Under the pieces are notes generated by a model that made no database searches, was not told the origin of the DNA, and was given only the letters and a program-made list of their open reading frames with translations. Source: Octopus sinensis (taxonomy: Eukaryota). Taken from it: a DNA stretch of 37,841 nt. The stretch covers positions 1-37,841 of the forward strand of contig NW_021831895.1 of NCBI RefSeq assembly GCF_006345805.1, given 5' to 3'. A program made the translations under genes and the position numbers. Within the stretch, counting starts at the first letter, position 1. The number at the start of each line of letters is the position of its first letter. Of this stretch, positions 5,521 through 30,824 are shown piece by piece.

Positions 5521-5544
5521 CATGTTATTTGAAATATATATTCT

Positions 5545-7775
5545 TTTCTACTTTTAGGCACAAGGCCCGAAATTTTTGGGGGGAAGGGATCCAGTCGATT
5601 AGATCAACACCAGTACGCAACTGGTACTTGATTTATCGACCCCGAAAGGATGAAAGGCAAAGTCGACCTCGGCGGAATTTGAACTCAGAACGTAACGGCG
5701 TACGAAATACCTGTTTCTATTTCTCTACTACCCACAAGGGGCTATACATAGAGGGGACGAACAAGGACAGACAAACGGATTAAGTCGATTATATCGACCC
5801 CAGTGTGTAACTGGTACTTGATTTATAGACCCCGAAAGGATGAAAGCCAAAGTCGACCTCGGCGGCATTTGAACTCAGAAAGTAACGGCGTACGAAATAC
5901 CTGTTTCTATTTCTCTACTACCCACAAGGGCTACACACAGAGGGGACGAACAAGGACAGACAAACGGATTAAGTCGATTATATCGACCCCAGTGTGTAAC
6001 TGGTACTTATTTAATCGACCCCGAAAGGATCAAAGGCAAAGTCGACCTCGGCGGGATTTGAACTCAGAACGTAGCGGCGTACGAAATACCTGTTTCGATT
6101 TCTTTACTACCCACAAGGGGCTAAACGCAGAGGGGACAACCAAGGACAGGCAAACGGATTAAGTCGATTACATCGACCCCAGTGTGTAACTGGTACTTAT
6201 TTAATCGACCCCGAAAGGATGAAAGGCAAAGTCGACCTCGGCGGAATTAGAACTCAGAACGTAGCGGCAGACGAAATACCTATTTCTATTTCTTTACTAC
6301 CCATAAGGGGCTAAACACAGAGGGGACAAACAGATTAAGTCAATTACATCGATCCCAGTGCGAAACTGGTACTTATTTAATCGACCCCGAAAAGATGAAA
6401 GGCAAAGTCGACTTCGGCGGAATTTGAACTCAGACCGTAGCGGCTTACGAAATACCTATTTCTATTTCTTTACTACCCACAAGGGGCTACACACAGAGGG
6501 GACGAACAAGGACAGACGAACGGATTAATTCGATTATATCGACCCCAGTGCGAAACTGGTACTTATTTAATCGACCCCGAAAGGATGAAAGGCAAAGTCG
6601 ACTTCGGCGGAATTTGAACTCAGAACGTAGCGCGTACGAAATACCTATTTCTATTTCTTTACTACCCACAAGGGGCTACATACAGAGGGGACAAAGAAGG
6701 ACAGACGAACGGATTAAGTCGATTATATCGACCCCAGTGTGTAACTGGTATTTATTTAATCGACCCCGAAAGGATGAAAGGCAAAGTCGACCTCGGTGGA
6801 ATTTGAACTCAGAACGTAACGGCAGACGAAATACTTATTTCTTTACTACCCACAAGGGAATAAACACAGAAAGGACAAACTAACGGATTAAGTCGATTAG
6901 ATCAACACCAGTGCGTAACTGGTAGTTTATTTATCGACCCCGAAAGGATAAAAGGCAAAGTCGACCTAGGCGGAATTTGAACTCAGAACATAGCGGCGTA
7001 CGAAATATCTATTTCTATTTCTTTACTGCCCACACGGGGCAAAACACAGAGGGGACAAACGGATTAAGTCAATGACATCGACCCCAGTGCGAAACTGGTA
7101 CTTATTTAATCGACCCCGAAAGGATGACCGGCAAAGTCGACCTCGGTGAAATTTGGACTCAGAACGTAGCGGCAGACGAAATACCTATTTCTCTACTACC
7201 CACAAGGGGCTAAACACAAAGGGGACGAACAAGGACAGACAAACGGATTAAGTCGATTACATCGACTCCAGTGCGTACCTGGTACTTATTTAATCGACCC
7301 CGAAAGGATGAAAAGCAACGTCGACCTCGGCGGAATTTGAACTCAGAACGTAGCGGCAGACGGAATACCTATTTCTTTACTACCCACAAGGGGATAAACA
7401 CAGAAAGGACAAACTAACGGATTAAGTCGATTAGATCAACCCCAGTGTGTAACTGGTACTTTATTTATCGACCCCGAAAGGATAAAAGGCAAAGTCGACC
7501 TAGGCGGAATTTGAACTCAGAACGTAGCGGCAGACGAAATACCTATTTCTCTACGACCCACAAGGGGCTAAACACAGAGGGGACGAACAAAGACAGACAA
7601 ACGGATTAAGTCGATTACATCGACTGCAGTTCGTAACTGGTACTTATTTAATCGACCCCGAAAGGATCAAAGGCAAGGTCGACCTCGGCGGAATTTGAAC
7701 TCACAACGTAACGACAGACGAAATACCGCTGGGCATTCCGCACGGCGTGCTAACGATTCTGCCGGCTCGCCGCCT
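5545..7775 (-). mobile_element. Tandem array of 12 SINE bodies (~175-190 bp units) with a single tRNA-like head
   Basis: Marker CCCGAAAGGAT (one copy CCCGAAAAGAT) recurs at ~5641, 5831, 6020, 6210, 6386, 6576, 6765, 6939, 7115, 7299, 7473, 7657; head only at ~7725-7775. Central motif GCCTTTCATCCTTTCGGGGTCGAT resembles a Meta-type SINE domain (recalled, unverified). Confidence 0.95.
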
Positions 7776-7920: not shown

Positions 7921-8481
7921 GGATCTCTTCCGGTTTGAACGGCAGTTTTTTCTAGCGGTGTCATATGAAATTGTCACCCATAATTATGACCCTAGTATCG
8001 ATCTATTGCATTTCAATCTGTTTTAGGGTTAGGGGTGGGGGGAAGGCTATCTTTTTTTCTTCAGAAATGTAAATAAACCCAATCTGTTTCTTAAACGAGG
8101 GACATATTCATACGGCACAGAATGTTTTCACCTCAATAGACGTCATTGATTGGTTGAAGTTGCAGAAATTGAAGATAAAAAAACCAACAAATATTTTACA
8201 AACTATAGAATTTTCTCAATAAAGCCAAGAGAAAAAGATGTTTTATAAACACATCCTACCAGTATACGAAGTTTAAAAGTGTTTAGTTACCTAGAAATTA
8301 TGTTAAAAACTGCCGTTCAAACCGAAAAGATCCCAAATATCTTACAAACTATAGAATGTTCTCAATAAAGCCAAGAGAAAAAGATGTTTTATAAACACAT
8401 CCTACCAGTATACGAAGTTTAAAAGTGTTTAGTTCGGTGGAAATTATTAAAAAAAAACTACCGGCCAAACCGAAAAGATCC
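7921..8481. mobile_element. TIR MITE (GGATC...GATCC family), monomer 7921-8333 plus partial duplication 8334-8481
   Basis: Starts GGATCTCTTCCGGTTTGAACGGCAG, ends CTGCCGTTCAAACCGAAAAGATCC; no clean TSD. Confidence 0.85.
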
Positions 8482-8660
8482 CCTATTTTATTTTGCAACT
8501 ATTGTGCTAATATCGTTGAAAAGATTTTGAGGAAAGTTTTGAAGGGAGACAATTAACAATACTAAATTTTACAACTTCTGTTTTTATTATTTCCCTTTAA
8601 TTGCTAATTGGTTTTACAACAAATATTTCATATTTTATTTCGTTTTTCTATGTGGTTTAT

Positions 8661-8950
8661 GCACTGGGGTCGACTTGATCCCTTTGTTTGTCCCCTCTAA
8701 GTTTAGCCCCTTGTGGGCAGGAAAGAAATAAGAAACGTTAGCACGGCCGGCAAAATGTTTAGCGGTAGCTTGTCTGCCGTTACGTTCTGAGTTCAAATTC
8801 AGCCGAGGTTGACTTTGCCTTTCATCCTTTCGGGGTTGATAAAGTACCAGTTTTGCACTGGGGTCGATCTAATCGACTTAATTCCTTTGTCTGTCTTTGT
8901 TTGTCCCCTCTAAGTTTAGCCCCTTGTGGGCAATAAAGAAACAAGAAATA
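8661..8950 (+). mobile_element. SINE fragments of the array family (3' fragment plus near-complete copy)
   Basis: Shared body and CCCCTTGTGGG..AAGAAATA tail. Confidence 0.85.
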
Positions 8951-8964
8951 AAAATTTCTCATAA

Positions 8965-9183
8965 TATTCTTTTCTACTCTAGGCAAAAGGCCTGAAATTT
9001 TTGGGGAAGGGTGCCAGTCAATTTGATCGACCCCAGTATGCAACTGGTACTTAATTTATCAACCCCGAAAGGAATAAAGACAAAGTCGACCTCGGCGGAA
9101 TTTGAACTCAGAACGTAAAGACAGATGAAACACTGCTAAGCATTTCTCCTGGCGTGCTAATGTTTCTGCCAGCTCACTGCCTT
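8965..9183 (-). mobile_element. SINE, alternative-tail subfamily (same tail as the first unit at 5545)
   Basis: Tail TTTTCTACTCTAGGCAAAAGGCCTGAAATTTTGGGG; CATAATATT occurs near both ends (possible TSD). Confidence 0.85.
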
Positions 9184-9289: not shown

Positions 9290-9890
9290 CAAAATCAAAT
9301 CAAATCAAATCAAAAAAAGAAAAAATCAAATCAAACCAAATCAAAATAGATGAACATCAATGGAATTTGTATCCTTGTGGTACCAGTGCCGGTGGCACAT
9401 AAGAAAACCATCCGAACGTGACCGTAGCCAGTACGGCATCGACTGGCCTCCGTGCTGTGGGCACGTAACTAACACCATCCGATCGTGGCCGTTCGCCAGC
9501 CTCGTCTGGCACCTGTGTCGGTGGCACATAAGAAAACACCATCCGAGCGTGGCCGTCTGCCAGCCTCGTCTGGCACCTGTGTCGGTGGCACATAAAAAAC
9601 ACCATCCGAGCGTGGCCGTCTGCCAGCCTCATCTGGCACCTGTGTCGGTGGTACATAAAAAACACTATTCGAGCATGGCCATCTGCCAGCCTCGTCTGGC
9701 ACCTGTGTCGGTGGCACATAAAATCACCCACTACACTCTCGGAGTGGTTGGCGTTAGGAAGGGCATCCAGCTGTAGAAACACTGCCAGATCTGACTGGCC
9801 TGGTGCAGCCTTCGGGCTTGCCAGACCCCAGTTGAACCATCCAACCCATGCTAGCATGGAAAGCGGACGTTAAACGATGATGATGATGAT
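9290..9890 (+). mobile_element. Non-autonomous retroposon-like repeat, (AAATC)n start and (GAT)n tail
   Basis: 3' region GGCGTTAGGAAGGGCATCCAGCTG...AACCCATGCTAGCATGGA; inverted relative at 26997-27297 and degenerate tail at ~23510-23630. Confidence 0.8.
9473..9722 (+). repeat. Minisatellite, four 63-64 bp GC-rich units
   Basis: Units start at 9473, 9537, 9600, 9663 (CACCATCCGAGCGTGGCC...GGTGGCACATAAAAAA). Confidence 0.95.
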
Positions 9891-11438: not shown

Positions 11439-11685
11439 TTTTATTTGCGTTGATATAAATCCTATCAAATTTAATTTTACACACCACTTTTATCATCTCC
11501 CACAGCAGACAAAAATTAATGGAAACAAACAGTTTTACGTAGACAATGAGCTGCAGGGACAAACTGTTTGGTATGATAAAGAGAGCAGAAAATGAGAGAG
11601 AGTTTTGATCTTGTTCTGCTTCTCTTCAATTAAAAAATACTCTTTTTTTACATTTTGAAAAACAACTGAAATTATTGTACTTATA

Positions 11686-11850
11686 GGTGCATGAATGGCT
11701 GTGTGGTAAGTAGCTTGCTAACCAACCACATGGTTCCAGGTTCAGTCCCACTGCGTGGCATCTTGGGCAAGTGTCTTCTACTATAGCCTCGGGCCGACCA
11801 AAGCCTTATGAGTGGATTTGGTAGACGGAAACTGAAAGAAGCCCGTCGTA
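11686..11850 (+). mobile_element. OR2-like SINE, 5' half
   Basis: Matches 2261-2430; ends in the internal (TA)n. Confidence 0.88.
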
Positions 11851-11866
11851 TATATATATATATATA

Positions 11867-12029
11867 GGCGCAGGAGTGGCTGTGTGGTAAGTAGCTTGTT
11901 TATCAGCCACATGGTTCCGGGTTCAGTCCCACTGCATGGCATCTTGGGCAAGTGTCTTCTGCTATAGCCTCGGGCTGACCAAAGCCTTGTGAGTGGATTT
12001 GGTAGACGGAAACTGAAAGAAGCCTGTCG

Positions 12030-12061
<32 letters not shown>

Positions 12062-12435: not shown

Positions 12436-12812
12436 CTTTTACTTGTTTCAGTCATTTGACTGTGGCCATGCTGGAGCACCGCCTTTAATCGAGCAACTTG
12501 ACCCCGGGACTTATTCTTTTGTAAGCCCAGTACTTATTCTATCAGTCTCTTTTGCCGAACCACTAAGTGACGGGGACGTAAACACACCAGCATCGGTTGT
12601 CAAGCAATGCTAGGGGGACAAACACAGACACACAAACGCATATATAAATATACATATATACGACGGGGTTCTTTCAGTTTTCGTCTACCAAATCCACTCA
12701 CAAGGCTTTGGTCGGCCCGGGCTATAGTAGAAGACCTTGCCAAGGTGCCACGCAGTGGGACTGAACCCGGAACCATGGGCATGTAAACAAGCTTACTTAC
12801 CACACAGCCCAC
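12436..12812 (-). mobile_element. OR2-like SINE, full length, inverted
   Basis: Reverse complement of 11867-12270. Confidence 0.92.
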
Positions 12813-21884: not shown

Positions 21885-22615
21885 TTAACCCTTTTGTTAC
21901 CGTATTTATTTTGAGATGCTCTGTGATTCTTTCAATTCCTTTAAATATAACAAAGAATTTAGTAAAATAACTTCGTTATCATTAAGCTCGTGTTAGGAAC
22001 ATAAATTGTGACTAAAATTTGGTGGAAGATTTTAATTCAAAATTTATGAAAACAAGACATTTGTACTACAGAGCCAGAGGTGGTTTCAACCAGGTTGGTA
22101 TCGAAAGAGTTAAGAATTGTTTCTCTATTATATTTTAACCCTTTCGTTACCATATTTATTTTGAGATGCTCTGTGATTCTCTCAATTATTTTAGATGTAA
22201 CAAAGAATTTAGTAAAATAACTTCGTTATCATTAAGCTCGGGTTAGGGAACATAAATTGTGACTAAAGTTTGGTGGAAGATTTTAATTCAAAATTTATGA
22301 AAACAAGACATTTGTACTACAGAGCCAGAGGTGGTTTCAACCAGGTTGGTATCGAAAGAGTTAAGAATTGTTTCTCTATTATATTTTAACCCTCTTGTTA
22401 CCATACTTCTGTTGAGATGCTCTGTGTTTCTTTCAATTAATTTTAAATCTAACAAAGAATTTAGTAAAATATCTTAGTTATAATTCAGCTAGTGTTAGGA
22501 ACATAAATTGTGACTAAAGTTTGGTGGAAGATTTTAATTCAAAATTTATGAAAACAAGACATTTGTACTACAGAGCCAGAGCCGGTTCCAGCCGGTTTGG
22601 TAACGAAAGGGTTAA
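21885..22615. mobile_element. Three tandem piggyBac-type MITEs (21889-22109, 22139-22360, 22390-22611)
   Basis: Each is bounded by TTAA; TIR consensus CCCTTTCGTTACC / GGTAACGAAAGGG; identical 21-bp spacer between copies. Confidence 0.92.
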
Positions 22616-26996: not shown

Positions 26997-27297
26997 TCAT
27001 CATCATCATCATCATCGTTTAACGTCCGTTCTCCATGCTAGCATGGGTTGGACGGTTCGACCGGGAATCTGGGAAGCCAGAAGGCTGCACCAGGCTCCGG
27101 TCTTATCTGGCAATGTTTCTACAGCTGGATGCCCTTCCTAACGCCAACCACTCCGTGAATGTAGTGGGTGCTTTTTACGTGCCACCTGCACAGGTGCCAG
27201 GCGAGGCTGGCAACGGCCACGGTCGGATTGGTGTATTTTATGTGCCACCGGCACGGAAGCCAGCCGAGGCGGTGCTGGCATCGGCCATGAGTCGGAT
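26997..27297 (-). mobile_element. Copy of the 9290-9890 retroposon-like family (3' part)
   Basis: (CAT)n then CGTTTAACGTCCGTTCTCCATGCTAGCATGGGTT...CTGGATGCCCTTCCTAACGCCAAC. Confidence 0.85.
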
Positions 27298-27474
27298 AGT
27301 GCTTCTATTCCTTAAACCTCTCACCATTCCACACACTTCTTTGATATTTCTAGTTGCAGATAATAGTTTTTCACTACTTAGCACAACATATTGTGCTACT
27401 GAACATGCCACTGCCTCTTTTTTTGTAAACAGGGCCTGTTCCTATTAGTTTTACATGCAGGTATGGCTGTGAGG

Positions 27475-28126
27475 AAGGCGCCAAGCTGGCAAAGGTGGCG
27501 AGCTAGTTAAGGCGGTGAGCTGGTTAAGGCAGCGAGCTGGCAGAAACGTTAGCACACTGGACGGAATACTTAGCGGTATTTCGCCCGTCGCTGTGTTCTG
27601 AGTTCAAATTCCGCCGAAGTCGACTTTGCCTTTCATCCTTTCAGGGTCGATAAATTAAGTACCAGTTACGCATTTGGGTTGATGTAATCGACTTAATCCG
27701 TTTGTCTGTCCTTGTTTGTCCCCTCTGTGTTTAGCCCCTTGTGGGCAGTAAAGAAATAGGTATTTCACCCGTCGATGTGTTCTGAGTTCAAATTCCACCG
27801 AGGTCGACTTTGCCTTTCATCCGTTCGGGGTCGATAAATTAAGTGCCAGTTACGCATTTGGGTCAATGTAATCGACTTAATCCGTTTGTCTGTCCTTGTT
27901 TGTCCCCTCTGTGTTTAGCCCCTTGTGGGCAGTAAAGAAATAGGTATTTCGCCCGTCGATGTGTTCTGAGTTCAAATTCCGCCGAGGTTGACTTTGTCAT
28001 GCATCCTTTCGGGGTCGATAAATTAAGTACCAGTTATGCATGTGGGTCAATGTAATTGACTTAATCCGTTTGTCTGTCCTTCTTTGTCCTCTCTGTTTTT
28101 AGCCCCTTGTGGGCAGTAAAGAAATA
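27475..28126 (+). mobile_element. SINE trimer (184-bp period) flanked by a 15-bp TSD
   Basis: GGTAT at 27575, 27759, 27943, 28127; TSD GGTATGGCTGTGAGG at 27460-27474 and 28127-28141. Confidence 0.95.
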
Positions 28127-28295
28127 GGTATGGCTGTGAGGTTAAGAAAATTGTTTTGCAATCATGTGATTTCAGGTTCATTCTCATTCTGTGGCACCTT
28201 GGGCAAGTGTCTTCTATTATAGCGCCTTGCAAACCAATACCATTGTCCGCAAATTTGGTAGAAGGAGACTGAGTGGAAGCCCATAAGTATGTAGG
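28127..28295 (+). mobile_element. Old OR2-like SINE that hosts the trimer insertion
   Basis: Contains GGCACCTTGGGCAAGTGTCTTCTA; its first bases lie at ~27455-27474. Confidence 0.75.
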
Positions 28296-29116
28296 TGTGT
28301 GTGAAGAGCCATGACTTTGTGATTGTAAGATCATAGTTTCAAATTCCAGACTCTGTGGTACATATGAAAATATAGTTGTTTACGACTTAGAGGTTCAAAC
28401 GGTCCGATGAAGATAAGTGGGGCGGAGAACGTACCCATCACCTCTACAATAATAATAATGGCAACACTATTTAAAAAAAATAAAATCACAAACAAACAAC
28501 ACACAACAAAATAGAATAAAACACACAAATATGGTTGGAGCTTGGTACTACTAACTACTAGAAACTTACTACAAAGCTTGTGGTGAGTGTAGTCAACTGG
28601 TATTACTATTGTTATTATTATTTTTATACTAACCCATATTGACCAGCTGCAGTCTCATCCATATATGATTTGTTGTCGATGTTTTTAAAAAATATTTCTA
28701 TGTATATATAATATAAGTATTCACATACATCCACACATCCACACAAATATATATTATATATATATATATATATAATATATATATATATATGAACAGCTAA
28801 GATTACGATATATATATATAAATGATATAAGACATTATAAGCATGAACTTAAGATAGTAAAAAAAAAAAAGAAACAAAAAAAACAAAAACAAACAAAAAA
28901 CAAGCCAGGTCCTTCAACAAGGCTTGAACCACATCACCATTGCTTTTCGGAACGACCATGCTATTACTTATAATTAAGAGCATCTACTTATAATGCCTCA
29001 TATGTGTTATATATATTTTGTCTCTCTTTGCCTCTTTTTTAAAATTTTTATTCAATTATTTAAATCATCAGAAAAATTTCGGGCACTTTGTATATGCATA
29101 TATATATATATATATG

Positions 29117-29153
<37 letters not shown>

Positions 29154-29714
29154 GTATATATATATGTATATAGTTCCCTATTTTTCTATGACAGTCTTTT
29201 TATTTTTTATTTGTTTAAATATATATTTTCTTCTGCGTTTATTTTGTTCCATGCGACAACCATTCAGACATAAATGTGATTTGCGAGTGATCTGGATGCG
29301 AAGAAGAAGAAGAGGAAGAAGAAGAGGAAGAAAAAGAATAAGAAAATGATAAAAAGAAAAAGGATAAGAAAAAAGAAGAAAAAGAAAAACAGTCAGGAAA
29401 ATTTTTTATAAAAAACAAAAAACAAACAAACAAAAACCAAGAAAAACATGGTTAATCAATGGTTAAACAGTGGTGGTCATCATTAAACATTTCATCAGGA
29501 TATAACATTAAATAAATATATATACACAACAAAAGTGAGGAAAATGAGACAAATAAAGGAGAAACATAATCATCATCATCATCATTATTATTATTAATAT
29601 CATTGTTGTTGTTGCTATCATCATCATCATCATCATAATCATCAGGCCAACTATACTGCTAGAGGTGTGATGCAATCAAGGTTTCCAGCTGGACAAGAAC
29701 TTGGACAAGGATAT

Positions 29715-30140
29715 AAGGTGGCGAGTTGGCAGAAATGTTAGCACGCCGGGCGAAATGCTTAGCGGTATTTCGTCTGCCGTTACGTTCTGAGTTCAAATTC
29801 CACCGAGGTCGAATTTGCCTTTCATCCTTTCAGGGTCGATAAATTAAATACCAGTTTTGCACTGGGGTCGGTATAATCAACTTAATCCATTTGTCTGTCC
29901 TTGTTTTGTCCCCTCTGTGTGTAGCCCCTTGTGGGCAGTAAAGAAATAGGTATTTTCGCCTGTTGCTACGTTCTGAGTTCAAATTCCACCGAGGTCGACT
30001 TTGCCTTTCATCCTTTCAGGGTCGATAAATTAAGTACCAGTTTTGCACTGGGGTTGGTATAATCGACTTAATCCATATGTCTGCCCTTGTTTTGTCCCCT
30101 CTGTGTGTAGCCCCTTGTGGGCAGTAAAGAAATAAGAAAT
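29715..30140 (+). mobile_element. SINE dimer (185-bp period)
   Basis: One head; junction GAAATA|GGTATTTTCG at 29949; internal GGTAT at 29764. Confidence 0.92.
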
Positions 30141-30400
30141 AAGCAGGGTGAGCAACCTTAATTAGAAATGCACTGAGAAAAAGCCAACCTTGAAAGGTGA
30201 AGCAGAAGTGCCACCGCTGTCCCTTTCCCCAGCCCCTATTTGGTCAGGTGGCAGTATGTGTTCTTGCACTTGCTGTGCAAAGTATGCATTCCATTGGTCA
30301 GTTGGGCCACTGGTTACTAGTGCCCCCACGAAGGCAAACTCAGCAAACACACATGGAGGCTGCACCACTTTCAGATGTTTTCTGGATGGTATGGCCTCCC

Positions 30401-30459
30401 GTTTGTCTGTCCTTGTTTGTCCCCTCTGTGTTTATCCCCTTGTGGGTAGTAAAGAAATA
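30401..30459 (+). mobile_element. 59-bp 5'-truncated SINE with 13-bp TSD
   Basis: TSD GGTATGGCCTCCC at 30388-30400 and 30460-30472. Confidence 0.92.
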
Positions 30460-30824
30460 GGTATGGCCTCCCTTTGTGACACACATTTTTTTCTGCAGCT
30501 CTTCACATTGACAAAGCTGCACTCCTGGATCCCAAAATGTGTCAAGATTGTAAGTTTTAGCAATATATAGGGAACTAGGGGTGAGTATAGTAGGGTTTAG
30601 ATACTCTCGAGAAAATTACTGGTACCAATATGAACAAAGTAAATAGTTTGTTTGAGAGGACTTTCATGCTAGGCTGGTGGGGAGATCCCTACAGATAAAT
30701 TGCAGGAATCTCTGGCCTGGCAGTGCAACCAAGGAGCATGTCTGGGTCAAGAGGGTCAGTGTAGATATGAAAGGGCTACCAAGCAAGACTGTCAGAGATC
30801 TGTGCAGAGTAAAGAAACAGTCCT

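What the first reader, a model, noticed from the sequence alone, without database searches (positions are those of the whole stretch)
27460..30472. Two independent TSDs both begin GGTATGGC: evidence for target-site specificity
The trimer's TSD is GGTATGGCTGTGAGG (27460 and 28127). A separate 59-bp truncated copy has TSD GGTATGGCCTCCC (30388 and 30460). Because the motif is present on the left side too, it pre-existed in the target. Both targets share 8 bp with each other and 5 bp with the SINE's internal GGTATTTCG. This links ordinary insertions to the self-multimers. One target is the head of another SINE family. Counter-examples: tails at ~8730, ~8950 and ~30140 (AAGAAATAAGAAA-type) are not followed by GGTAT, so the bias may be subfamily-specific.
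Basis: partly seen in the sequence, partly recalled or inferred. Interest (0 to 1): 0.82.

Follow-up and report, generated by a model that had tools for sequence, protein, structure and literature searches.

The report
Octopus SINE insertions at GGTATGGC sites
Two separate insertions of an octopus short retrotransposon (SINE) are flanked by perfect target duplications that both start GGTATGGC, which is far beyond chance, but two cases out of seven cannot show whether the enzyme or RNA-to-target base pairing chooses the site.

Summary
GGTATGGCTGTGAGG (27460/28127) flanks a full-length SINE whose 184-bp body unit is present three times. GGTATGGCCTCCC (30388/30460) flanks a 59-bp 3' fragment of the same SINE subfamily.

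The window is octopus DNA. The first target is the head of another tRNA-like SINE, and an uninterrupted paralogue (L003:1433) reads GGTATGGCTGTGTGG|TTAAGAAG, so GGTAT pre-existed.

GGTAT occurs at 6.2e-4 per position in 169.5 kb of octopus DNA. Two of seven independent 3' ends being followed by it has P of about 1e-5. Both sites also share GGC and a GTTTT 7-11 nt upstream.

"Specificity" is too strong, because five of seven ends lie elsewhere. AAATA|GGTAT is also the unit-to-unit join in all three multimers of the window.

My best reading: target-primed reverse transcription in which the nicked target (...ATACC-3') pairs with the GGUAU that follows the tail in multi-unit transcripts. A nuclease preference remains a serious rival.

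Units within a multimer share private substitutions, so arrays grow mostly in cis, not by repeated insertion. The LINE partner was not found. This is a modest, thinly sampled variant of a known kind.

The parts
27449..27452 (+). TTTT run at -11 to -8 relative to the first TSD base of target 1
   Evidence: TTTT inside -12..-6 occurs at 3.9% of all positions and at 5 of 209 GGTAT sites.
27460..27474 (+). Left TSD copy GGTATGGCTGTGAGG. It is the first bases of the head of a second tRNA-like SINE (here called SINE2b).
   Evidence: 15/15 match, directly abutting the SINE 5' end AAGG
27475..27525 (+). Three extra tandem ~17-bp copies of the SINE's first 17 nt (start positions 27475, 27492, 27509)
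27526..27574 (+). SINE1 head proper (AAGGCAGCGAGCTGGCAGAAACG...), up to the internal GGTAT
27575..28126 (+). Three head-to-tail 184-bp units (27575-27758, 27759-27942, 27943-28126). Each starts GGTATTTC and ends ...GCCCCTTGTGGGCAGTAAAGAAATA.
   Evidence: period 184, 93% matches; pairwise identity 92-95%, higher than to any other locus
28127..28141 (+). Right TSD copy GGTATGGCTGTGAGG
28127..28303 (+). Remainder of the interrupted SINE2b copy (GGTATGGCTGTGAGGTTAAGAAAATTG...). The first T4 run downstream of the trimer is at 28154-28157.
   Evidence: paralogue L003:1433 minus strand is uninterrupted: ACAGGTATGGCTGTGTGGTTAAGAAG
29715..30141 (+). SINE1 dimer: head plus two units. The junction is AAAGAAATA|GGTATTTTCG with a T4 run at 29953-29956. 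The terminal tail is AAAGAAATAAGAAATAAG, not followed by GGTAT, and no TSD was detected.
   Evidence: (96% matches)
30378..30381 (+). TTTT run at -10 to -7 relative to the first TSD base of target 2
30388..30400 (+). Left TSD copy GGTATGGCCTCCC
30401..30459 (+). 59-bp 5'-truncated copy of the T-type 3' domain, ending AAAGAAATA. It carries GGGTAG and TTTATCCCC, the states seen in the 12-unit array, not those of the trimer.
30460..30472 (+). Right TSD copy GGTATGGCCTCCC
5535..7775 (-). SINE1 head plus 11 T-type units, plus a last unit that ends in the other subfamily's 3' domain (...CCTAAAAGTAGAAAAG). All unit joins are (GAAATA)1-2|GGTAT-like.
   Evidence: periods 190 and 379; A2~A5 95%, A7~A10 95%; no significant TSD around the whole array
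8661..8954 (+). Partial tandem of the same subfamily: a 3' piece (8661-8730) joined to monomer position 14 (8731-) at a shared AGAAA. Both pieces carry the private CTCTAAGTTTAG variant.
8961..9183 (-). Copy of the sister subfamily (same head and body, different 3' domain ...CCTAGAGTAGAAAAG). Its TSD starts AATATTATG.

Best explanation
The region holds two independent LINE-mediated (target-primed reverse transcription) insertions of one subfamily of an octopus tRNA-like SINE.

Shown:
- Both have perfect TSDs.
- One landed in the head of another SINE, where GGTATGGC already existed.
- In both, the minimal tail AAAGAAATA is followed directly by GGTAT.
- That same join is what links the 184-190-bp units in every multimer of this SINE.

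Inferred mechanism:
- The partner enzyme nicks the bottom strand just 5' of GGTAT.
- The freed 3' end (...ATACC-3') base pairs with the GGUAU that follows the tail in transcripts that run from one unit into the next. The element has no T4 run, so Pol III should read through. That is my own knowledge of Pol III termination.
- Reverse transcription then starts exactly at the tail. The start of the TSD is therefore selected by complementarity to the RNA just 3' of the tail. This is the same logic as A-rich TSD starts for L1/Alu.
- A weak protein-level preference (T4 about one helical turn upstream, GGC after GGTAT) may act on top of this.

When the target is the internal GGTAT of a resident copy, homology between the new cDNA and the resident would resolve the 5' end in register and add one head-less unit. 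Arrays then grow mainly by unequal exchange in cis.
For: 1. TSDs are 15/15 and 13/13.
2. An uninterrupted paralogous target exists at L003:1433.
3. GGTAT background is 6.2e-4 per position, against 2 of 7 ends.
4. AAATA|GGTAT is the internal join in the trimer, the dimer and the 12-unit array.
5. TSD starts of other copies also mimic what follows the 3' core.
   - The L001 T-type copy has a TSD of AATA(C/A)TATAAGGCCTA directly after AAAGAAATA.
   - Sister-subfamily TSDs start AATATT or ATTATT directly after GTAGAAAAG.
6. The partial tandem at 8730 is joined at a shared AGAAA.
7. The 12-unit array ends in the other subfamily's 3' domain, which requires at least one inter-element event at the GGTAT register.
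8. The literature gives a precedent. In RTE LINE/SINE pairs the first TSD nucleotide tracks the 3' microsatellite of the RNA (PMC13295347).
Against: - Pairing with the junction RNA (GGUAU-UUCG) explains only 5 of the 8 shared bases. GGC has a frequency of 0.006 per position. It also does not explain the shared upstream GTTTT.
- No copy was seen that reads further into the next unit (for example AAATAGGTATTTCG|TSD).
- The founder junction cannot itself be explained by pairing.
- Stringent-type reverse transcriptases can start at the tail without target complementarity (own knowledge).
- Only two cases exist.
Confidence: 0.45

Rival explanations
1. One reading: the partner LINE's endonuclease (or ORF2 protein) recognises an extended DNA motif, roughly TTTT-N6-7-|GGTATGGC. 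Multimers arise because the SINE carries a partial copy of that motif (GGTATTTCG) internally.
For: - The identity of the two targets extends to 8 bp and to an upstream GTTTT. RNA pairing with the junction does not explain either.
- Two of five T4-N-GGTAT sites in 169.5 kb are occupied, against 0 of about 200 other GGTAT sites. This comparison is post hoc.
- A T-stretch one helical turn upstream of the nick is the published RTE-clade signature (PMC13295347).
- Site-specific Tx1-type and Dong-R4 LINEs are listed as recently active in octopus (PMC13282606).
- The hybrid 12-unit array fits insertion into the internal GGTAT of a resident copy.
Against: - Five of 7 ends of the same 3' domain are not at GGTAT.
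- The L001 copy has no T-stretch.
- An intact GGTATGGC site (L003:1433) and three T4-N-GGTAT sites are empty.
- The internal site matches only 5 of the 8 bases, yet multimers are common.
- Units within a multimer share private substitutions, so repeated independent insertions are not what built them.
- There is no TA at the nick, as the RTE signature requires.
Confidence: 0.3
2. Ascertainment through microhomology-mediated duplication. A monomer that happened to land next to GGTAT has the structure GGTAT-unit-GGTAT and is prone to tandem duplication. On this view a GGTAT flank is a precondition for becoming a multimer, not an insertion preference, and the 59-bp fragment is coincidence.
For: - Trimer units share six private substitutions in positions 47-67 and are 92-95% alike.
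- The 8730 join uses a 5-nt AGAAA repeat, and both pieces share a private variant.
- The array shows higher-order periodicity.
Against: - The 59-bp fragment is not a multimer, yet it has the same 8-mer. The chance of that is about 1e-5.
- The dimer's 3' flank is not GGTAT.
- The array ends in a foreign 3' domain.
Confidence: 0.1
3. The 59-bp piece is a DNA-level templated insertion (replication template switch). It would have been copied from the end of the trimer 2.3 kb upstream and returned to its own template through the GGTATGGC microhomology, which would create the apparent TSD.
For: - Same strand and orientation, 2.3 kb apart.
- Identical minimal tail.
- The 8-mer is exactly the sequence after the trimer's tail.
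- The left join has a CC microhomology.
Against: - The fragment differs from all three trimer units at two positions (TTTATCCCC, GGGTAG), where it matches units of the 12-unit array.
- It is only 92% identical to the trimer's last unit.
- This model cannot explain the trimer itself, whose 5' end is the exact SINE start.
Confidence: 0.05
4. Pure coincidence of two unrelated TSD starts.
Against: - The 5-mer was defined independently by the multimer junction.
- P is about 8e-6 for 2 of 7.
- The 8-mer is otherwise seen once in 339 kb of strand.
Confidence: 0.03

Closest known systems
L1/Alu target-primed reverse transcription at TT|AAAA
   Same: TSDs are of variable length. The first TSD bases look like a continuation of the element's 3' end, because the nicked strand pairs with the RNA tail. 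New copies often land in or behind tails of resident copies.
   Different: The tail here is a short (GAAATA)/(AGAAATA) repeat behind a specific 3' domain, not poly(A). The recurrent TSD start is GGTAT(GGC), which matches an internal site of the SINE and the multimer junction, not the tail.
RTE-clade LINE/SINE 'Tn-TA' insertion signature (Nakatsuka and Ohshima 2026, PMC13295347)
   Same: Both GGTAT targets have a T run about one helical turn upstream of the nick. In that work the first TSD base tracks the RNA's 3' microsatellite, which is the same kind of interplay between RNA and target.
   Different: There is no TA at the nick here (A|G and T|G). The third clear TSD of the subfamily lacks the T run. 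No RTE partner has been shown.
Sequence-specific non-LTR elements (R1, Tx1 clade, R2, Dong/R4). In R1/R2, read-through 3' sequence can pair with the target (own knowledge).
   Same: A long shared target word (8 bp), and the possible use of sequence downstream of the element in the RNA to register priming.
   Different: Most copies of this SINE subfamily are elsewhere, so it is not site-specific in that sense.
Octopus tRNA-derived SINEs (OK, OR1, OR2 of Ohshima and Okada 1994, cited in PMC4758252) and the SINE-rich octopus genomes (PMC13282606)
   Same: Same host genus; tRNA-like head with a B-box-like GAGTTCAAATTCC; LINE-type 3' end; high copy number.
   Different: I could not compare with the published consensus sequences, so the family name is open. 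Multimer arrays and TSD motifs are not described in the papers I could read.
SINE- or TE-derived tandem arrays and satellites that grow by unequal exchange
   Same: Head-to-tail units in register, within-array homogenisation, and a 2-unit higher-order period in the 12-unit array.
   Different: The arrays keep a single promoter-bearing head, can be flanked by a TSD as a whole (the trimer), and one is a hybrid of two 3'-domain subfamilies.

Membership tests
LINE-dependent (TPRT) SINE insertion | Short direct repeats of variable length flanking the element exactly at its ends | tested here: met
   15/15 at 27460/28127, 13/13 at 30388/30460, 15/16 for the L001 copy
LINE-dependent (TPRT) SINE insertion | tRNA-related head with internal Pol III A and B boxes | tested here: inconclusive
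   B-box-like GAGTTCAAATTCC and an A-box-like stretch are visible by eye. ARAGORN and Rfam found no tRNA.
LINE-dependent (TPRT) SINE insertion | 3' domain shared with an autonomous LINE partner | not testable with these tools
   No reverse-transcriptase ORF or LINE 3' end was found in 169.5 kb. No eukaryotic DNA collection can be searched.
LINE-dependent (TPRT) SINE insertion | Short terminal repeats and 5'-truncated copies | tested here: met
   Tails are (GAAATA)1-2 or (AGAAATA)n. Truncated copies are at 30401, L002:3930 and L003:19945.
Sequence-specific non-LTR retrotransposition (R1/Tx1/R2/Dong type) | Nearly all copies occupy one target sequence | tested here: not met
   2 of 7 independent ends are at GGTAT. 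The others are followed by AATA... or AGAAAT....
Sequence-specific non-LTR retrotransposition (R1/Tx1/R2/Dong type) | Nuclease type and clade of the partner | not testable with these tools
   Partner not found
RTE-clade Tn-TA insertion signature | T run about 10 nt upstream of the first TSD base | tested here: inconclusive
   TTTT at -11..-8 and -10..-7 in the two GGTAT targets, absent in the L001 copy. Background is 3.9%. The feature was noticed post hoc.
RTE-clade Tn-TA insertion signature | TA at the nick, with the first TSD base being A or T | tested here: not met
   The nicks are A|G and T|G
Tandem array grown by unequal exchange | Units more alike within a locus than between loci; higher-order period | tested here: met
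   Within-locus identity is 92-96%, against 91% or less (one pair 92%) between loci. TRF finds periods of 190 and 379, and A2~A5 are 95% alike.

The most novel reading that the evidence does not exclude
An octopus LINE/SINE pair uses a composite target (T run, about 6-7 nt, then GGTATGGC-like). The SINE carries a partial copy of that target inside itself. Insertions into resident copies are then resolved by homology into head-less tandem units. This would be a retrotransposition-driven route from a dispersed SINE to satellite-like arrays.
Probability: 0.25. Interest if true: 0.65.

Novelty: new variant of a known kind. Interest (0 to 1): 0.4.

Why it matters
SINEs make up about a tenth of octopus genomes (PMC13282606), yet how they choose sites and how they turn into tandem arrays is not described. 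If the GGTAT start is real genome-wide, it would give three things:
- a handle on the unknown LINE partner;
- a testable case of RNA-guided or motif-guided target choice outside the L1 and RTE systems;
- a concrete mechanism linking retrotransposition to the birth of satellite-like repeats.

With two cases it is a lead, not a result.

Tried and rejected
1. Getting more octopus DNA.
   - Translated SINE ORFs were used as protein queries. They gave only O. bimaculoides hits and three loci, 131.7 kb in total.
   - The third protein search (aminopeptidase) returned no further octopus proteins and was wasted.
   - Four look-ups found nothing.
   - Exact scans of the metagenome and prokaryote genome collections for the 3' domain gave 0 hits.
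2. LINE partner. There is no reverse-transcriptase-like ORF or motif in 169.5 kb. nhmmer with a 3'-domain profile found no extra copies.
3. Known RNA families. There is no Rfam or tRNA match for the SINE heads or the targets. I recalled a resemblance of GGCCATACC (the reverse complement of target 2) to the 5' end of 5S rRNA. Rfam does not support it, so I dropped it.
4. The flanks of the 59-bp fragment as a repeated element or protein. There is no Pfam hit and no paralogue in the loci, so no empty-site paralogue exists for target 2.
5. A TSD around the whole 12-unit array. The best alignment is no better than shuffles.
6. Structure of the 3' domain and junction. A hairpin is predicted at the junction (GGCAG...GAAAT/ATTTC...CTGCC), but the energies are not better than shuffles.
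7. 'Minimal tail only in GGTAT copies'. I rejected this after the L001 copy proved to have the minimal tail too.
Full report
**Observation.**
- GGTATGGCTGTGAGG lies at 27460-27474 and again at 28127-28141. Between the two copies is one SINE head followed by three head-to-tail units of 184 bp (27575, 27759, 27943).
- GGTATGGCCTCCC lies at 30388-30400 and 30460-30472, around exactly 59 bp that match the last 59 bp of the same SINE.
- Both repeats are perfect and abut the element ends. On the left, the trimer's TSD is followed directly by AAGG, which is the 5' end shared by nearly all copies of this SINE.

**Source and family.**
- The window is octopus DNA. Translated repeat ORFs hit only Octopus bimaculoides proteins.
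- Through those proteins I fetched three O. bimaculoides loci (L001-L003, 131.7 kb). That gives 169.5 kb in all.
- The SINE (here SINE1) has a head of about 46 nt, a body, and one of two different 3' domains.
- The 'T-type' 3' domain ends ...GCCCCTTGTGGGCAGTAAAGAAATA.
- The commoner sister type ends ...CCTAGAGTAGAAAAG.
- The repeated unit of the multimers is monomer position 47 to the tail. It starts at the internal GGTATTTCG.
- The window holds three such multimers. They are the trimer, a dimer (29715-30141) and a 12-unit array on the minus strand (7775 to 5535). Every internal join is (GAAATA)1-2 followed by GGTAT or a one-base variant.

**The motif pre-existed in target 1.**
- The trimer sits in the first bases of another tRNA-like SINE.
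- A paralogous, uninterrupted head at L003:1433 (minus strand) reads ACAGGTATGGCTGTGTGGTTAAGAAG.
- The window reads GCAGGTATGGCTGTGAGG-[trimer]-GGTATGGCTGTGAGGTTAAGAAAATTG.
- For target 2 I found no paralogue, so pre-existence there rests on the duplication itself.

**Chance.**
- GGTAT occurs 210 times in 339,056 strand positions, or 6.2e-4. That count includes the SINE-internal copies.
- GGTATGGC occurs five times, four of them being these TSD copies.
- GGC has a frequency of 0.006 per position.
- The 169.5 kb holds seven independent T-type 3' ends.
- Two of them are followed by the 5-mer that the multimer junction defines independently, which gives P of about 8e-6.
- Both targets also have GTTTT 7-11 nt upstream of the nick. 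A T4 run in that window is found at 3.9% of all positions and at only 5 of 209 GGTAT sites, and this feature was noticed post hoc.

**Limits of 'specificity'.**
- The other five ends are followed by AATA... (L001, L002) or AGAAAT... (L003, 8942, 30134).
- The one other clear TSD is AATA(C/A)TATAAGGCCTA. It has no T run.
- One GGTATGGC site and three T4-N6-7-GGTAT sites are empty.

**A general pattern.**
- TSD starts in this SINE family mimic whatever follows the 3' core.
- Sister-type TSDs start AATATT, ATTATT or ATCATC directly after GTAGAAAAG.
- Sister-type copies often lie in (ATT/ATC)n microsatellites or right behind another copy's tail.

**How the multimers grow.**
- Units are more alike within a locus than to units elsewhere. 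The trimer shows 92-95% and the dimer 95-96%, against 91% or less for the trimer and 92% or less for the dimer to other loci.
- The three trimer units share six private substitutions in positions 47-67.
- The array has a two-unit higher-order period, and non-adjacent near-twins such as A2~A5.
- Growth is therefore mostly in cis, not by repeated insertions from unrelated sources.
- The array nevertheless ends in the sister subfamily's 3' domain. At least one inter-element event took place in the GGTAT register. This was either insertion into a resident copy or ectopic recombination. No TSD around the whole array could be shown.
- A second kind of join, tail to monomer position 14 at a shared AGAAA, is at 8730. 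Its two pieces again share a private variant.

**Mechanism.**
- The trimer has an exact SINE 5' end and a TSD, so it arrived through RNA.
- In target-primed reverse transcription, the first TSD bases are the bases whose complement forms the primer's 3' end. This is established knowledge of L1, and is restated in PMC13295347.
- A primer ending ...ATACC-3' cannot pair with the tail itself. It pairs with the GGUAU that follows the tail in any transcript running from one unit into the next.
- The units contain no T4 run. The dimer junction has one (29953-29956), and the first T4 after the trimer is at 28154-28157.
- I therefore favour selection of GGTAT-starting nicks by pairing with junction-containing RNA (0.45).
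- When the target is the internal GGTAT of a resident copy, homology-assisted 5' joining would follow.
- This explains the 5-mer and the identity of the insertion end with the junction, and it fits the family-wide pattern. It does not explain the shared GGC or the shared GTTTT.
- Those two features favour a protein-level preference (0.3). Alternatively they fit pairing with read-through RNA from a master copy sitting in a SINE2b head, whose flank would read GGUAUGGCUGUG.
- Ascertainment through microhomology-mediated duplication (0.1) fails on the 59-bp fragment.
- A templated DNA copy from the nearby trimer (0.05) is unlikely. The fragment carries TTTATCCCC and GGGTAG, the states seen in array units and not in the trimer.

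**Comparison with known systems.**
- It works like TPRT of a 'stringent' LINE/SINE pair.
- It resembles the RTE-clade Tn-TA signature in the upstream T run and in the dependence of the TSD start on the RNA 3' end (PMC13295347). It lacks the TA nick.
- It fails the defining test of site-specific elements, since most copies are elsewhere.
- RTE, CR1, L1-Tx1 and Dong-R4 LINEs are reported as recently active in octopus (PMC9115989; PMC13282606).
- None of these could be tied to this 3' domain, because no LINE sequence was within reach.

**Verdict.**
- The interpretation as target-site preference is reasonable but rests on two events. It is not specificity, and it is not resolved between nuclease and RNA pairing.
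- The link to multimers holds for the junction register, but not as the main mode of array growth.
- This is a modestly interesting variant of known SINE behaviour that a genome-wide census would settle quickly.

Noticed in passing
L001:58540, L001:66206, L002:8473, L002:13877, L002:22486, L002:22740; window 8961-9183 (-): The sister subfamily (3' end ...CCTAGAGTAGAAAAG) has TSDs starting AATATT/ATTATT/ATCATC. It often sits in (ATT/ATC)n microsatellites or directly behind another copy's tail, giving full-length head-to-tail pairs. This looks like a stronger target bias than the one under study. It is reminiscent of TAA-repeat-specific Dong/R4 LINEs (own knowledge), which are reported active in octopus.
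   Followed up: partly
window 27475-27545: The trimer's 5' end carries four tandem, diverged copies of the SINE's first ~17 nt (AAGGYGGYGAGCTRGYW). The origin is unexplained; it could be RT jumping at the RNA 5' end or slippage.
   Followed up: no
window 5535-7775 (-): A 12-unit array with a two-unit higher-order period. Some units have a 10-13-bp deletion, some junction tails have GAAATA doubled, and the last unit switches to the other subfamily's 3' domain.
   Followed up: partly
window 8661-8954: A partial tandem joined tail to monomer position 14 at a shared AGAAA. Both pieces share the private CTCTAAGTTTAG variant. It lies tail-to-tail with a sister-type copy at 8961-9183.
   Followed up: partly
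every unit junction, e.g. window 27744-27773: The unit ends are inverted repeats (GGCAG-TAAA-GAAAT-AGGT-ATTTC-GT-CTGCC), so each junction is an imperfect palindrome. The predicted hairpin is not more stable than shuffled sequence.
   Followed up: partly
window 11682-12046: The other abundant SINE (head GGCGCAGGAGTGGCTGTGTGGTAAG) is also present as a 181-bp x 2 tandem (92% matches). Partial tandem duplication of SINEs therefore seems general in this genome.
   Followed up: no
window 12614-12641; L002:4043-4072: The T-type 3' domain shares a ~25-nt stretch (GTCTGT..TTGTTTGTCCCC) with the body of the other SINE family (weak nhmmer hits).
   Followed up: no
window 9378-9723 and 26997-27283: A third repeat family (ORF MLAWVG...) is present with a 63-bp x 5.4 internal tandem at 9378-9723. 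A second copy lies just upstream of the trimer's target.
   Followed up: no
L003:19797-19835; L001 about 69690-69720: Short interstitial telomere-like repeats, (CCCTAA)n and (GGTTAG)n, lie next to or inside SINE1 copies.
   Followed up: no
window 21885-22615 and 8188-8482: Further unannotated tandem repeats: 251 bp x 2.9 (92% matches) and 146 bp x 2 (90% matches).
   Followed up: no
window 30499-30550: Just right of target 2 there is a polypyrimidine tract plus CAG, and 52 nt later ATT|GTAAGT. This is an exon-like arrangement on the plus strand. There is no protein or Pfam support.
   Followed up: partly
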